A stretch of 64,000 nucleotides of DNA. It comes from Oculina patagonica. Taxonomy: Eukaryota. Below the pieces are notes generated by a model. That model had not been told where the DNA came from. It saw only the letters and a program-made list of their open reading frames with translations, and made no database searches. Shown here piece by piece: positions 7,367-46,141 of this stretch (position 1 is the first letter of the stretch; every line of letters begins with the position of its first letter). The translations under genes and the position numbers were made by a program. The DNA is taken from assembly GCF_052425735.1 (NCBI RefSeq), contig NC_135758.1:48360001-48424000 (forward strand), in the 5' to 3' direction.

Positions 7367-8106
7367 TTAACCACTGAAGCCGTATTTCGACGAGAACGGA
7401 TGCAAGGACATGTTCGAATAGACGACTTGAAGGTTTGAAGAAGGTCTAAAACTGGGTATTACATTATAAAAGTGTGGAAATTGGTGCAATTGAGTGTTTA
7501 TCTCCCCGCAGCACGGGAAACCAGTCTGAAAGTGACTAAACATAGTGTTCATTTCTTCCCACCGCAGAGTTGCTTCAAAGTCCGGCGCCATTTGTTTTTT
7601 CCACTTGGTTCGCCGATTCTGGAACCATGTTTTGACTTGTGTGTCTGTGAGATTAAGGCCCTTTGCCAAATTGTTTCTTTCCGTGATGGTTAGATATTTC
7701 TTGTCGTGAAACTTTTCCTCCAAAGACTTTAACTGACTGCTGGTAAACGCAGTCCTCCTTCTGCGAATCTTGTTGATGTAAAGGTTTTCACGGCTCGGGG
7801 ATCCTGTTTCATCTTCTTCGCTTGGACTTTCGTTCAATAGATCATCTGCATCTTCTTTCTCCAATGTGCAGTTTTCTTTGTTATCTGAAATAAAAAACGC
7901 AATTTCCCAGATTTAGCGTTAATTCCTCCTCTGAGATTCTTACACTAAGAGGACTTTACTTATGACAATGTAAAAATGCACTAACCTATCCCAGCTGCCC
8001 CTTCTCCTTTTAACGCATGAAGCACATTTTGTGCTTCCAAGCGAGTTGGGTCTTTATGCATTGGCTCAGAGTTCCCCAAAATGGCATCAATGCTAAACGA
8101 AGCCAT
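7367..8106 (-). CDS. NKL/ANTP homeobox protein, cluster gene 1 (eh1 + BarH/Tlx-like homeodomain), ~212 aa
   Basis: Exon 1 8106-7986 ([11 protein letters not shown]...), GT-AG phase-1 intron 7985-7885, exon 2 7884-7367 in frame with [58 protein letters not shown]. Confidence 0.93.
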
Positions 8107-8185
8107 CGACTTGTGTTGTTCACTGAGAGAAGAATGTTAATGACAATAACCTCCCCAGGAGAGTAATAAAATCAACAACCATTCG

Positions 8186-8335
8186 TAGCTGCTAAATATT
8201 GTGATACCAACATCCGGACACTATTAATCTCTTTGACAGCCAATTAGGAACGTCTGATAACCTACGCATGTTTCCACTTAAAGAGACAAAGAGCCGGTAA
8301 ATGTTTAGAGCTAACTGTAAACAGAGAGATATAAG
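8186..8335 (-). promoter_or_regulatory. Conserved proximal promoter module of homeobox gene 1
   Basis: 57-nt core 8191-8247 matches the gene 5 promoter at 52/57 and the gene 2 promoter at 51/57 positions, ungapped (counted by eye). Confidence 0.85.
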
Positions 8336-8564
8336 CGATCAATTTGACGGATAGCTAATTATATCATCAAATATTTGACTGGGCAAATATGAGATAATGC
8401 ATACAGCGGTCTCCGGTTTTTTGAACACCTGACTTCCGACTGTTTTTTGTTGGAAATCTTTTCTCGTTACTAACTGCAAACGCAGTTGATTTTTTTCGTC
8501 CTTCACAAGGAGTAAGTGCGTTAATTAACGAAGTGTCTCTTAAAACATTAAAGGTTGGAAAGAT

Positions 8565-8660
8565 TGCGTGAGGACCTAAACAAATGTTATTAAAGGTCTT
8601 TTGAGATTTGGTATTAGTTCAACAAATGTCAAGCTTATTAAAGCCGACAATTGCCTAATT
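8565..8660 (-). promoter_or_regulatory. Conserved distal element ~510 bp upstream of gene 1
   Basis: AGTTCAACAAATGTCAAGC (8616-8634) is the exact reverse complement of 36501-36519 upstream of gene 5; flanking TTGCGTGA and GACAATTG are also shared. Confidence 0.7.
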
Positions 8661-43603: not shown

Positions 43604-44564
43604 TCACACCAAAATAACAATTAAAAACAGAGCTTAAATTAATTGTTAATTGTAACATTGTTGCTGTTATTGCTGTTTATTTGATTTGCTACCTTCTTGA
43701 TTTGATTTGTACACATAAATATTCAAGAATGAGTAAGTTTCTATGAGTTATATACACGTTTGTTTTGCATGTCAGATACTATTACCTCCATCTTTTAGTT
43801 TTTAATTTCTTTGCATCCTGCCTCTTAAAATATAAATAACTATTCATTCTAAAAGGAAACGAGGCCTCTCTTACAAGATTATTAGGAATTACCGGTGATA
43901 TTTCCCGCAAACTGACCTCCGCATGAGTACAATATACAACACTTCAATTCATAAATCCCTAATCCCACAGAGAGATTTATAACATTTTTAAAAGTGCTAG
44001 GAATACTAGTTTACCTCCTGCAGCGAAAAAATCTCTAAAAAATACTTTTTTAACACAACAATAATTAACACTAGCTCCTAACATCTTTTCTTAAAAAGAG
44101 TCTGAGAAGTTTATCTTAAATAATCTCAAAGAAATAAGAGAAGCAACATTGCCAGTTACAACAGTGTTAAAAAGTTAACACAGTTAAATATGGCAACCAT
44201 CTGTTCGGAACTTTTTTCTGCCTTGCAAGACAGTACAAGAACATTCCCGTTTCGATGATTATATGATTATGGAATTTGCCGTGTAATTATTTAAATAAGC
44301 AGACTCCTCTATGAACAGAACTTTTCATAAACTTAAACCATAGAACGTTTGGTTGGACCGAAGATGCAGTAATTTACGAAAATACACTTGTACTGTGAAT
44401 AGCAATTTTTTATTATTAGTTTTTTAGCATATTTCTCAAAAAATCTCATACATTCAACATTAGTAGTAACAAAATACATATTCTTTGTTTTGTGTGGTGC
44501 TGAAAGCTTTTTATGGGTCGTATTTGCTGTTCCGGTCAATGATTGAGCTAGACTTAGAAATTAA

Positions 44565-44744
44565 ATGGGTTATGTCACGGTAAGTTGAGTATGTTGTGAT
44601 TTACAAAGTTACCTTCAAACCGATGGGCCTCAAAATAAAATTTGTTTAAGTAAAATAAAAAACAGTTACTGTAAGAGGTGGTAAGACAAAATTGAAAACT
44701 TTAGTTTAAACTTTTCAAGATGCGCCATATTTGACATAGCTCCT
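44565..44744. mobile_element. Shorter copy of the TTAA-flanked (Kolobok-like) element
   Basis: TTAA|ATGGGTTATGTCACG ... TGACATAGCTCCT|TTAA; ends resemble those of 19910-20292. Confidence 0.5.
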
Positions 44745-45432
44745 TTAATGGGGAGAGTTTTTACTAGTTTTGTCTTGAAACTTCAAGGTGTTCATAAAAC
44801 TGGTGATTGACATTATGCTCACACTATGAGTACAAAATTAAACGGATTGTGTCAAAGTTGAATGATTTTTTTTCCATACCTTGATTAATGGGCAGGCGAC
44901 TAAAATGTCGGAAGCTCATTATCCACCCAAAACATGATATTTTTAGATAAACTTATGTGGTTTTTTGTCACTCTATATGGACCGTGAAATTCAATCCATG
45001 TTTATCTAGCTATGTTTTGCCTAGTTAGTGTTGAGGTAAAGGTAATGGACTATCTAGCAATACAGAAGGCTATACGAATATACAAGTAAAAGCTGCATGA
45101 CAAAAGTCTTCTTAAACGTGATACTCTGTGATGTCACACTGGCTGATTACCGTAAGAATCCCTCGCTAAATATAAACTGTGCCCAAATGATGATTTTTGT
45201 GTTCAATTAATTCTAACAGTTTGGCTTTCTTGTGTTCACTATCAGTACGCCCTTTTCTAAAAAGTTCAAGTAAAGCATCTCTCTACATCAACAAATCGAC
45301 ATTAGGTTAATGTTATATCAATAATTTTGAAGTAACTTGCAACTAAGATTTCCATAAGGCTTCTTGTTGTTGTTTTCAGCAGAAGTGGACACGACGCTAC
45401 TGATATATCGTCACTGCCCCCTTGGTTGTCTC

Positions 45433-46141
45433 TTAGTGGTAGGGGGACATGTAGTTGTACAAAGACATGTTTGAATACATGACCTGTAAATTATTTGCTT
45501 GATGCCAGTTCTCTAAAGGATAAAGCCAAGGCTCTGCTTTTAGCATTGACATGTTATGGTTGAAGAAGTTTTGGGATGGAAAATGCAAATACTGTTGAGG
45601 GTAAATATAAGGCAAAGAGTTACTGTCTGTGTTAAGACCTGACTCAAGCTCAGTAGAGATCTCTTTCTTCCACTTGGTCCGTCTGTTTTGAAACCAGGTT
45701 TTGACTTGAGTGTCGCTTAATTTAAGACTCTTGGCCAAATTGTTTCTTTCGCTGATAGATAAGTACTTCTTTTTCGTGAATTTATGTTCCAGCGTTTTAA
45801 GTTGACCGTTTGTAAATGCCGTGCGCCTTCGCCGCCTTTTACGGACGAGACAGGAATCATTCTGTGAAGAAATTGTCTTTCCATCTTCTTCGCTGTTTTC
45901 CTCTTCATCACTCATATACAACTTTTCTTTGACACACCCTGACGAATAAACAAGAAACTCCGATCAACAATTCTGTGATTTAGTTGCTGTTGTTGGATTA
46001 GTTTATTGCTATCAACAAAAACTTACCTATGCTGCAGTTACTTCTTCCCTCGTCAAATCTTCTATAATTGATTTGAACCCTTCTGTCAGCCTCACTTTCT
46101 TGTTGTTTTCCCAGTATTGCATCGATAGTAAAGGAAGACAT
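45433..46141 (-). CDS. NKL/ANTP homeobox protein, cluster gene 6, ~206 aa
   Basis: Exon 1 46141-46027 ([11 protein letters not shown]...), phase-1 intron 46026-45939, exon 2 45938-45433 with [58 protein letters not shown] and NNLQVMYSN. Confidence 0.93.

What the first reader, a model, noticed from the sequence alone, without database searches (positions are those of the whole stretch)
7367..46141. Six-gene tandem cluster of compact eh1-homeobox repressors with an identical two-exon design
Seen: six intact paralogs of 201-213 aa. Each has eh1 at or near the N-terminus ([48 protein letters not shown]), an 88-154-nt phase-1 intron before an intron-free homeobox, and helix 3 [VI][12 protein letters not shown][KR]. 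Established: eh1 recruits Groucho/TLE, and T47/T54 are typical of BarH/Tlx-like NKL homeodomains. Inference: a lineage-specific NKL cluster that fits no single bilaterian family. It appears maintained by selection, since all frames are open while intergenic DNA and linkers have diverged.
Basis: partly seen in the sequence, partly recalled or inferred. Interest (0 to 1): 0.85.

Follow-up and report, generated by a model that had tools for sequence, protein, structure and literature searches.

The report
Six-gene coral eh1-homeobox repressor cluster
A stony coral (Oculina patagonica) carries six intact, small homeobox genes side by side that belong to an unnamed, coral-and-anemone-specific gene family of probable transcriptional repressors; the cluster is real, old and conserved across stony corals, but it is one more example of a known habit of these animals rather than a new kind of system.

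Summary
At 7367-46141 there are exactly six two-exon genes of 201-213 aa. Each has an N-terminal eh1 motif, a GT-AG phase-1 intron of 88-154 nt, an uninterrupted homeobox and helix 3 [VI][12 protein letters not shown][KR]. Both N gaps lie in g2-g3 intergenic DNA.

Two corrections:
- The strands are mixed (-,-,-,+,+,-), so the array is not strictly tandem.
- An intronless rhodopsin-type GPCR gene sits between g1 and g2.

Spliced contigs from three public runs confirm the g4 and g5 introns.

The genes form one clade with anthozoan homologs: Nematostella, Exaiptasia, Actinia, many corals, and the octocoral Xenia for the g4 type. Homeodomain identity to any bilaterian family is only 52-68%. BarH/Bari are nearest by profile score and reciprocal search, and Nk1 by raw identity, but AU tests cannot decide. 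The coral has its own canonical Gbx and Nk1, and no canonical BarH was found.

The g1/g2/g5 split predates the Complexa/Robusta split. Partial gene order and the GPCR neighbour recur in other corals. Ortholog dN/dS is 0.08-0.17, and paralog dS is saturated.

The genes are probably Groucho-dependent repressors; this is inferred, not shown. I found no published description of the cluster. It may correspond to the "ANTP-group-c" of Law et al. 2023. The scan noted the C-terminal motif and a distal element separately, on this same window.

The parts
7367..8106 (-). g1, 212 aa. Exon 1 is 7986-8106 (eh1 FSIDAILG). The intron is 7885-7985 (101 nt, phase 1). Exon 2 is 7367-7884 (homeobox, C-terminal [12 protein letters not shown] motif, stop).
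   Evidence: The Orbicella ortholog is P0035. A g1-type ortholog with the same GPCR neighbour is in L051.
16968..17730 (-). g2, 202 aa. Exon 1 is 17613-17730 (FTINAILG). The intron is 17459-17612 (154 nt, phase 1). Exon 2 is 16968-17458.
   Evidence: The model is identical to NCBI ACROYT_G004184 (P0045). The Acropora millepora ortholog P0064 is seen as an intron-free transcript contig, L001.
22831..23618 (-). g3, 213 aa. Exon 1 is 23501-23618 (FCINAILG). The intron is 23355-23500 (146 nt, phase 1). Exon 2 is 22831-23354.
   Evidence: The model is identical to NCBI ACROYT_G004185 (P0086). The g3-type clade has SH-aLRT 100.
31623..32382 (+). g4, 202 aa, the divergent member, which lacks the C-terminal SNLQVVYSN motif. 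Exon 1 is 31623-31812 (FTIAALLG). The intron is 31813-31963 (151 nt, phase 1). Exon 2 is 31964-32382.
   Evidence: The intron is confirmed by spliced contigs in runs X1, X2 and X4. Orthologs occur in Desmophyllum, Stylophora, Acropora, Montipora, Nematostella and Xenia.
37032..37761 (+). g5, 201 aa. Exon 1 is 37032-37155 (FSINAILG). The intron is 37156-37279 (124 nt, phase 1). Exon 2 is 37280-37761.
   Evidence: The intron is confirmed by spliced contigs in runs X1, X2 and X4. Pocillopora and Stylophora orthologs are P0010 and P0012. The NCBI model P0001 starts at Met16 and so omits the eh1 motif.
45433..46141 (-). g6, 206 aa. Exon 1 is 46027-46141 (FTIDAILG). The intron is 45939-46026 (88 nt, phase 1). 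Exon 2 is 45433-45938.
   Evidence: The g6-type clade has SH-aLRT 96 and holds many unnamed coral sequences. g6-type genes are in L049 and L050.
8167..8337 (-). Conserved proximal promoter/5'UTR block of g1. Its cores are TAATTGGCTGTCAAA (8232-8246) and the 29-nt GTCCGGATG..AATATTTAGC (8191-8219).
   Evidence: The g1/g5 match is 172 nt at 81% identity, E 7e-41. See also the alignment and the pattern scans.
17784..17906 (-). The same conserved block upstream of g2, with cores at 17830-17844 and 17789-17817.
23725..23739 (-). A weaker copy of the core (TAATTGGCTATCAAA, one mismatch), 107-121 nt upstream of the g3 ATG.
36816..36984 (+). The same conserved block upstream of g5, with cores at 36905-36919 and 36932-36960. 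It lies inside the spliced contig that starts at 36883, so at least part of it is 5'UTR.
   Evidence: The core is also found at the same distance in Pocillopora (L002, L003), in a Pocillopora transcript contig (L004, 59-73) and in two other corals (L048, L051).
11746..12645 (+). An intronless rhodopsin-family GPCR gene (299 aa) interleaved between g1 and g2, divergent from g1. It is part of the conserved microsynteny block but is not a homeobox gene.
   Evidence: Pfam 7tm_1 at 1.4e-44. A 71%-identical ortholog sits at the same relative place next to the g1-type gene in another coral, L051.
20343..21486 (.). Two assembly gaps (20343-20539 and 21336-21486) with a 796-nt piece between them, in g2-g3 intergenic DNA.
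   Evidence: No gene model touches them.

Best explanation
The locus is a roughly 39-kb cluster of six functional paralogs. They belong to an anthozoan-restricted, so far unnamed family of the NKL subclass of ANTP-class homeobox genes.

Each gene encodes a small transcription factor of about 200 aa, built from:
- an extreme N-terminal eh1 motif;
- a divergent acidic linker;
- a Q50/T47/T54 homeodomain;
- in five of the six, a family-specific C-terminal [ST]SNLQV[VM]YSNMS motif.

The most likely mode of action is as follows. The homeodomain binds TAAT-type sites. The eh1 motif then recruits the Groucho/TLE co-repressor, whose gene is present in this genome, so that the proteins act as dedicated repressors.

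The cluster arose by local duplication plus inversions. The g4 type split from the rest before the hexacoral/octocoral divergence. The g6 and g3 types split early. g1, g2 and g5 arose by a triplication in the scleractinian stem, before the Complexa/Robusta split. The array, including an interleaved GPCR gene, has since been kept under purifying selection.

g1, g2 and g5, and weakly g3, still share a highly conserved promoter-proximal/5'UTR element. This suggests common or cross-regulation.

Shown here: gene structures, splicing of g4 and g5, family membership, age, synteny and selection. Inferred: Groucho binding, repression, DNA specificity and the role of the shared element.
For: - Structures and motifs.
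- Splicing of g4 and g5: spliced contigs in three runs from three studies. Orthologs are also seen as intron-free transcript contigs (L001, L004, L046, L047).
- Own clade: UFBoot 93 and SH-aLRT 99.
- Within-family homeodomain identity to Nematostella is 42-52 of 60, against 27-41 of 60 to any other family.
- Profile search of 1.84 billion representatives: family members come first, then BarH, Bari, Nk1 and Gbx.
- Canonical Gbx, Nk1, Msx, Hmx, Nk6 and Nk3/4 exist elsewhere in the genome.
- NK-like K19/E30, T47/T54 and the 41-45 signature.
- Age: the g2 and g5 clades each hold a Complexa subclade (Acropora, Porites) and a Robusta subclade (Oculina, Pocillopora, Stylophora). The g4 clade holds Nematostella and Xenia.
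- Synteny: g4 followed by g5 on the same strand in Pocillopora (L002, L003) and in L048. g6 and g1 have the same order and strand on one contig of another coral. The GPCR neighbour is conserved.
- Selection: ortholog dN/dS 0.08-0.17, homeodomain near 0, paralog dS saturated.
- A Groucho TLE_N-encoding gene is present at C1:0.63 Mb.
- Shared element.
Against: - No direct evidence that the eh1 motifs bind Groucho or that the proteins repress. eh1 function rests on established knowledge of the motif in other families.
- Transcription was checked only for g4 and g5. The run type 'RNA' is a guess by the index, although spliced joints imply cDNA. One poly(A) raw-read run showed essentially no reads.
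- The 60-column homeodomain tree cannot place the family. AU tests reject no alternative (p 0.35-0.64), so 'own family' could still be a fast-evolving offshoot of BarH, Bari or Nk1.
- g2-g3 adjacency crosses two assembly gaps.
- Most coral homologs are unnamed metagenome or Logan proteins, so the taxon sampling behind the dating rests on few named species.
Confidence: 0.75

Rival explanations
1. The six genes are the anthozoan co-orthologs of the bilaterian Bar lineage (BarH/Barhl and/or Bari = CG11085), which surveys report as missing from cnidarians. On this reading the lineage was not lost. It diverged (Y49 changed to F49) and expanded into a cluster.
For: - After family members, BarH and Bari dominate the profile search, with matches running from the eh1 motif to past the homeodomain.
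- A Bari-like protein (P0186) searched against the Oculina genome returns exactly the six window genes as its top six hits (84-70 bits, then a drop to 66).
- A crinoid BarHL2 has g6 as its best hit, and no canonical BarH ([12 protein letters not shown]) was found in the assembly.
- Trees with family+BarH or family+BarH+Bari held together have the best likelihood, +3.4 and +3.2 lnL over the free search.
- The RRRRTAFT arm, K19 and an eh1 motif at the extreme N-terminus are shared with Bari.
- Ryan 2006 (PMC1779571) and Hamada 2020 (PMC7642931, Table 7) list no BarH or Bari for cnidarians.
Against: - Every BarH and Bari representative with a canonical homeodomain has Y49 (the three BarH-variant representatives read CWFQNRR). 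All six genes and nearly all family members have F49.
- Homeodomain identity is only 34-39 of 60, no better than to Nk1 (36-41).
- In the free IQ-TREE tree the family is a separate branch in an unresolved group.
- The AU test does not favour this reading significantly.
- The C-terminal motif is absent from the BarH and Bari representatives.
Confidence: 0.22
2. The family is an anthozoan offshoot of Nk1 or of Gbx, that is, extra copies of a family the coral already has.
For: - The best solved-structure match is GBX1 (75 bits).
- The RRRRTAFTS arm and KKYL..TER are Gbx-like.
- The highest raw homeodomain identity is to Nk1 (36-41 of 60).
- From my own knowledge, Gbx and Nk1 also carry eh1 motifs and have two-exon genes.
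Against: - The coral has canonical single Gbx (C7:18.19 Mb) and Nk1 (C2:5.46 Mb) genes elsewhere.
- Gbx has E19, L28, I47 and A54, and Nk1 has I47. The family has K19, I28, T47 and T54.
- Gbx and Nk1 fall outside the group that holds the family in the IQ-TREE tree.
- Constrained trees are worse by 2.2 and 2.9 lnL, though this is not significant.
Confidence: 0.08
3. The array is an artefact: haplotype or assembly duplicates, or a set of decaying pseudogenes.
For: Two assembly gaps lie inside the span.
Against: - Paralogs are only 34-67% identical in protein, and synonymous sites are saturated.
- Each copy has its own ortholog clade in other corals.
- All frames are open and have canonical splice sites.
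- g4 and g5 are spliced as predicted.
- dN/dS is far below 1.
- The gaps are intergenic.
Confidence: 0.01

Closest known systems
BarH/Barhl and Bari (CG11085) families, NKL subclass of the ANTP class
   Same: - An eh1/FIL-type motif N-terminal to the homeodomain.
- T47, Q50, T54 and the TDTQVKTW stretch.
- The RRRRTAFT arm and K19, shared with Bari.
- Nearest families by profile score and by reciprocal genome search.
   Different: - F49 instead of the Y49 seen in BarH and Bari representatives.
- KKYLTI[ST]ERN instead of QKYLSVQDR or QKYLSVADR.
- Only 57-65% homeodomain identity.
- A family-specific C-terminal [11 protein letters not shown] motif.
- Much shorter proteins.
- Monophyly is not demonstrated.
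Nk1 and Gbx families
   Same: - An eh1 motif plus homeodomain.
- An intron upstream of an uninterrupted homeobox.
- The RRRRTAFTS arm (Gbx) and T54 with WKKQ (Nk1).
- 57-68% homeodomain identity.
   Different: - Canonical Nk1 and Gbx orthologs exist elsewhere in the same genome.
- The diagnostic residues at positions 19, 28, 47 and 54 differ.
- The tree places them outside the group that holds the family.
Anthozoan lineage-specific ANTP expansions: the 22 'unknown family' ANTP genes of Nematostella (Ryan 2006, PMC1779571) and the anthozoan-specific, tandemly expanded 'ANTP-group-c' of Actinernus (Law 2023, PMC10598428)
   Same: - An anthozoan-restricted ANTP/NKL clade.
- Growth by local duplication.
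- Members that resist assignment to bilaterian families.
   Different: - The identity of this family with group-c, or with particular NVHD genes, could not be checked, because no sequences or supplements are held.
- Here the array is small and old (crown Scleractinia or older).
- It is conserved in order and retains a shared cis-element, rather than being a recent burst.

Membership tests
Homeobox superclass, ANTP class | A 60-residue homeodomain matching Pfam PF00046, with best matches among ANTP-class proteins | tested here: met
   All six match PF00046 at 1e-22 to 3e-21. The best solved-structure matches are GBX1, BarHL2, Msx1, Tlx2 and Nk2.
NKL subclass | The signature [AKST][DENPS][LAST]QV at homeodomain positions 41-45 (Ryan 2010, PMC2959044) | tested here: met
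   The signature is exact in g1, g3, g5 (TDTQV) and g6 (SDTQV). g2 (SDTQI) and g4 (SNKQV) each miss by one residue.
NKL subclass | NK-type polarity of residues 19 (positive) and 30 (negative), as opposed to the Hox-like reverse (bioRxiv 10.1101/2023.03.14.532566) | tested here: met
   K19 and E30 in five genes. g2 has M19 and E30.
eh1-containing repressors | An FxIxxIL-type eh1 motif N-terminal to the homeodomain | tested here: met
   F[STC]I[DNA]A[IL]LG at residues 4-11 (5-12 in g3, 10-17 in g4) in all six, and in anemone and octocoral homologs.
eh1-containing repressors | Physical recruitment of Groucho/TLE and transcriptional repression | not testable with these tools
   Only the presence of a TLE_N-encoding gene in the genome was shown. 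The multi-exon WD40 domain could not be handed to complex prediction.
BarH/Barhl | Y49 ([12 protein letters not shown]) and QKYLSVQDR in helix 2 | tested here: not met
   F49 and KKYLTI[ST]ERN in all six. All canonical BarH representatives returned have Y49; three variants read CWFQNRR.
BarH/Barhl | Monophyly with bilaterian BarH in a homeodomain tree | tested here: inconclusive
   The free tree has an unresolved 83/85 group holding the family, BarH, Bari and Barx-like genes. The constrained family+BarH tree is 3.4 lnL better, with p-AU 0.64.
Bari (CG11085) | Reciprocal best match, together with Y49 and QKYLSVADR | tested here: inconclusive
   The six window genes are the top six hits of the Bari-like protein P0186 in the genome. 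However, Y49 and the helix-2 signature are not met. That P0186 is a Bari member rests on its similarity to tick and flea 'barH-like 1' proteins and on my recollection of CG11085.
Gbx | E19, L28, I47, A54, and being the genome's Gbx ortholog | tested here: not met
   The family has K19, I28, T47 and T54. A canonical Gbx is at C7:18.19 Mb (L007). Gbx falls outside the family's group in the tree.
Nk1 | I47, TRYLSVCER, and being the genome's Nk1 ortholog | tested here: not met
   A canonical Nk1 is at C2:5.46 Mb (L008), nearly identical to bilaterian Nk1 representatives. The family differs at these sites.
Tlx | High homeodomain identity and a clade with Tlx | tested here: not met
   Identity is 31-34 of 60. 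Only one Tlx reference was available, a moth sequence on a long branch, so the tree placement is weak.
ANTP-group-c (Law et al. 2023) | An anthozoan-specific ANTP clade expanded by tandem duplication | not testable with these tools
   The description fits, but no member sequences or supplementary files are held.

The most novel reading that the evidence does not exclude
The cluster is the long-'missing' cnidarian representative of the BarH/Bari lineage. On this reading the lineage diverged rather than being lost, and it has been preserved since before crown Scleractinia as a co-regulated array of Groucho-dependent repressors. The array would be held together by a shared promoter/5'UTR element carrying homeodomain-type (TAATTG) and Meis-type (CTGTCA) sites. 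That would make it a non-Hox, cnidarian-specific example of a regulatory constraint maintaining a homeobox cluster.
Probability: 0.18. Interest if true: 0.65.

Novelty: new member of a known kind. Interest (0 to 1): 0.45.

Why it matters
Cnidarians are the sister group of bilaterians. Their many unassigned NKL homeobox genes are a blind spot in reconstructions of the ancestral ANTP repertoire.

This locus gives a clean, well-bounded case:
- a family with three diagnostic modules (N-terminal eh1, a distinctive homeodomain, a C-terminal motif);
- an array that has kept its order, its neighbour and a cis-element since at least the origin of modern stony corals.

It could be used in three ways:
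- to name and place the family;
- to test whether BarH/Bari was really lost in cnidarians;
- to ask, with existing coral and anemone single-cell atlases, whether the paralogs have partitioned cell types or stages.

It is not a new type of system. Anthozoan-specific homeobox expansions are already well documented.

Tried and rejected
I replaced it with a 59-row careful tree.
- AU tests of eight constrained groupings rejected none. Sixty columns have no power.
- The Nematostella A-type protein P0068 was not on record in the look-up of encoding contigs. I therefore could not measure its distance to the g4-type gene on the same chromosome. No second homeobox lies within 10 kb of the g4-type gene (L045).
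- The supplement of Law 2023 is not held, so group-c identity is untested.
- A full-text search for six diagnostic peptide strings found no paper. Several literature searches found no description of the cluster.
- The poly(A) raw-read run X20 gave about four reads on the g4-g5 stretch. This is uninformative about expression.
- The RNA-structure test of the shared 5' element gave -3.6 kcal/mol and no compensatory pairs, so a structured-RNA reading is rejected.
- A conserved upstream-ORF reading (ATG-[TC]TG-GTA-TCA-TAA in g2, g5 and Pocillopora) is weakened. g1 reads through, and one coral ortholog lacks the ATG.
- No structure was predicted, because the fold of a homeodomain is not in question.

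
Full report
**What is there.**
The window is Oculina patagonica chromosome-scale contig C1, positions 48,360,001-48,424,000 of 48.98 Mb. A six-frame scan finds exactly six WFQNRR homeoboxes and six eh1 strings. Enumerating GT-AG introns gives one clearly best model per gene:

| Gene | Strand | Span | Length (aa) | Intron (nt) |
|---|---|---|---|---|
| g1 | - | 7367-8106 | 212 | 101 |
| g2 | - | 16968-17730 | 202 | 154 |
| g3 | - | 22831-23618 | 213 | 146 |
| g4 | + | 31623-32382 | 202 | 151 |
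| g5 | + | 37032-37761 | 201 | 124 |
| g6 | - | 45433-46141 | 206 | 88 |

- All introns are phase 1 and lie at the same place in the linker, upstream of an uninterrupted homeobox.
- All six match Pfam Homeodomain at about 1e-22.
- My g2 and g3 models are identical to NCBI's ACROYT_G004184 and ACROYT_G004185.
- NCBI's g5 model starts at Met16 and so omits the eh1 motif.
- tblastn with the six proteins finds no further copy or relic in the window.
- A genome-wide search finds no further family member and no other strong homeobox hit on C1.

**Gaps.**
The N runs at 20343-20539 and 21336-21486 lie between the g2 ATG (17730) and the g3 stop (22831). No exon or intron touches them. Only the adjacency and spacing of g2 and g3 rest on the scaffold. 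I did not try to fill them.

**Corrections to the description.**
- The strands are -,-,-,+,+,-. g3 and g4 are head-to-head, and g5 and g6 are tail-to-tail, so the array is a cluster with inversions, not a strict tandem.
- An intronless rhodopsin-type GPCR gene (11746-12645, +; Pfam 7tm_1 1.4e-44) sits between g1 and g2.

**Expression and splicing.**
I laid contigs of three runs from three studies on 31700-37699. This gave joints that skip 151 nt (intron 31813-31963, GT..AG) and 124 nt (intron 37156-37279, GT..AG), exactly as predicted for g4 and g5.
- The run type is only guessed to be RNA, but spliced forms imply cDNA.
- A poly(A) raw-read run had almost no reads there, which says nothing either way.
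- Orthologs in Acropora and Pocillopora also occur as intron-free contigs with complete ORFs (L001, L004, L046, L047).

**What family.**
NCBI's automatic names for the orthologs disagree wildly: Tlx1-like, NK1, BarH-like 1 and 2, MSX-2-like, GBX-2-like, ceh-9, ceh-19, vex1-like, pnx, Dlx2b-like. The tests gave the following.
- A profile of twelve family members was searched against 1.84 billion representative proteins. It returned family members first. A plateau at 120-135 bits followed, made mostly of BarH/BarHL proteins, with Bari-like, Nk1 and Gbx proteins among them.
- Homeodomain identity of the six genes to these families is 31-41 of 60. Identity to the Nematostella family members is 42-52 of 60.
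- The coral has its own canonical Gbx (C7:18.19 Mb), Nk1 (C2:5.46 Mb), Msx, Hmx, Nk6, Nk3/4, Mnx and three Barx-like genes.
- No canonical BarH turned up. A crinoid BarHL2 hits g6 best. A Bari-like protein has exactly the six window genes as its top six hits.
- The careful IQ-TREE homeodomain tree has 59 rows. The six genes and their anthozoan homologs form one clade (UFBoot 93, SH-aLRT 99). That clade also took in P0172 and the long-branch Oculina gene L010 (C8:29.35 Mb), which FastTree placed with the Barx-like genes instead.
- The family clade lies inside a weakly supported group (83/85) with BarH, Bari and Barx-like genes. Gbx and Nk1 fall outside it.
- AU tests reject none of eight alternatives. 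Family+BarH has the best likelihood.
- Diagnostic residues are NK-like: K19/E30, T47, T54, and the 41-45 signature in four of six. The BarH/Bari hallmark Y49 is absent.
- This agrees with surveys that found no BarH in Nematostella and left 22 ANTP genes unassigned (PMC1779571), and with a table of cnidarian NKL families that has no Barhl or Bari row (PMC7642931).

My reading is a distinct, anthozoan-restricted NKL family, nearest to the Bar/Nk1 neighbourhood, with an unresolved deeper origin.

**Family signatures.**
There are three:
- the eh1 motif within the first 17 residues;
- a homeodomain with [15 protein letters not shown][ST][22 protein letters not shown];
- a C-terminal [ST]SNLQV[VM]YSNMS[LM]YP[YF] motif.

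The C-terminal motif is present from sea anemones to corals and in further unnamed lineages. It is absent from the BarH and Bari representatives.

g4 is a separate subtype with its own conserved C-terminus. Its homeodomain is identical in Acropora digitifera and Oculina.

**Age and synteny.**
A 156-row family tree shows the following.
- The g4 clade contains Xenia (an octocoral), Nematostella and corals.
- There are separate g6 (SH-aLRT 96) and g3 (SH-aLRT 100) clades.
- There is an anemone clade.
- g1, g2 and g5 group together (SH-aLRT 89). The g2 and g5 clades each split into an Acropora/Porites subclade and an Oculina/Pocillopora/Stylophora subclade. The triplication is therefore older than crown Scleractinia.

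Synteny evidence:
- In Pocillopora damicornis and P. verrucosa, the g4 ortholog lies 4 kb upstream of the g5 ortholog on the same strand. In P. verrucosa this is 0.35 Mb from a chromosome end. In Oculina the cluster lies 0.56-0.62 Mb from the end of C1.
- Another coral contig shows the same g4-g5 pair (L048).
- A further contig carries a g6-type and a g1-type gene 58 kb apart, in the Oculina order and orientation. It also carries a 71%-identical GPCR ortholog divergent from the g1-type gene.
- In Nematostella the g4-type and A-type genes are on one chromosome, but no second homeobox lies within 10 kb of the g4-type gene.

**Selection.**
Nei-Gojobori estimates:

| Ortholog pair | dN/dS |
|---|---|
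| g4 vs Pocillopora | 0.079 |
| g4 vs Acropora | 0.081 |
| g5 vs Pocillopora | 0.119 |
| g2 vs Acropora | 0.173 |

- The homeodomain is at 0-0.04 and the rest at 0.11-0.24.
- Between paralogs, dS exceeds 1.4 or is undefined.
- This excludes assembly or haplotype duplicates and pseudogenes.

**Shared cis-element.**
Although paralog synonymous sites are saturated, g1, g2 and g5 share 57-172 nt at 81-93% identity just upstream of the ATG.
- The cores are TAATTGGCTGTCAAA (four copies including g3, against 0.36 expected by chance) and a 29-nt GTCCGGATG..AATATTTAGC. They lie 100-140 nt from each ATG, in the gene's orientation.
- The first core recurs at the same distance in Pocillopora and two other corals. 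It also occurs inside a Pocillopora transcript contig, so it is at least partly 5'UTR.
- There is no conserved RNA structure.
- It contains homeodomain-type and Meis-type site strings. Auto- or cross-regulation is a hypothesis only.

**Mechanism.**
The established role of eh1 is to bind the WD40 domain of Groucho/TLE. This is general knowledge of the motif and was not tested here. A TLE_N-encoding gene is present at C1:0.63 Mb. I therefore read the six proteins as short, dedicated Groucho-dependent repressors that differ mainly in their linkers and in their regulation. The C-terminal motif is probably a second protein-interaction module of unknown partner.

**Novelty.**
I found no paper that describes this family or cluster. 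It may overlap the anthozoan-specific, tandemly expanded 'ANTP-group-c' of Law et al. 2023, which I could not check. Lineage-specific NKL expansions are a known feature of anthozoans. I therefore rate this a new, well-defined member of a known kind, of moderate interest. A minority reading is that it is the divergent cnidarian Bar lineage.

Noticed in passing
window 11746-12645 (+): An intronless rhodopsin-family GPCR gene (299 aa) lies inside the homeobox cluster. A 71%-identical ortholog holds the same divergent position next to the g1-type gene in another coral (L051), where a second GPCR lies nearby.
   Followed up: partly
window 8191-8246, 17789-17844, 23725-23739, 36905-36960: A promoter-proximal/5'UTR element is conserved between paralogs whose synonymous sites are saturated, and in orthologs of at least three other corals. 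It contains TAATTG and CTGTCA strings. A short upstream ORF (Met-Leu-Val-Ser-stop) is present in g2, g5 and Pocillopora but not in all copies. No RNA structure was found.
   Followed up: partly
window 8616-8659 and 36476-36519: A second, distal 45-nt element (82% identity) is shared by g1 and g5, 510-553 nt upstream of their ATGs.
   Followed up: no
window 37032-37076: NCBI's model for g5 (ACROYT_G004187, 186 aa) starts at the second Met and drops the eh1 motif. Spliced contigs start at 36883, and the orthologs support the 201-aa form.
   Followed up: yes
G000 C7:26.478-26.519 Mb (L005, L006, L043): A second anthozoan 'orphan' family of eh1-homeobox genes ([32 protein letters not shown], about 222 aa) forms its own small cluster. 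Its orthologs are also named inconsistently: MSX-2, MSX-3, ceh-16, CHOX-7.
   Followed up: partly
G000, whole genome: No canonical BarH/Barhl or Bari homeobox ([12 protein letters not shown]) was found in the Oculina assembly. Many other homeobox clusters exist: C7:18.14-18.22 Mb next to Gbx, C2:3.19-3.37 Mb, C11:3.65-3.84 Mb, C7:32.40-32.52 Mb and C7:2.22-2.26 Mb.
   Followed up: partly
window 34343-34443: A short stretch between g4 and g5 has very high contig depth and many loose ends in all three runs. It looks like a dispersed, transcribed repeat.
   Followed up: no
window 39140-39353: A two-copy tandem repeat of 107 nt (83% match) lies in the g5-g6 intergenic DNA.
   Followed up: no
window 1-64000 in C1; L003: The cluster lies about 0.6 Mb from the end of a 49-Mb chromosome in Oculina. 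In Pocillopora verrucosa it lies about 0.36 Mb from the start of a 31-Mb chromosome. This may be a conserved near-terminal position.
   Followed up: no
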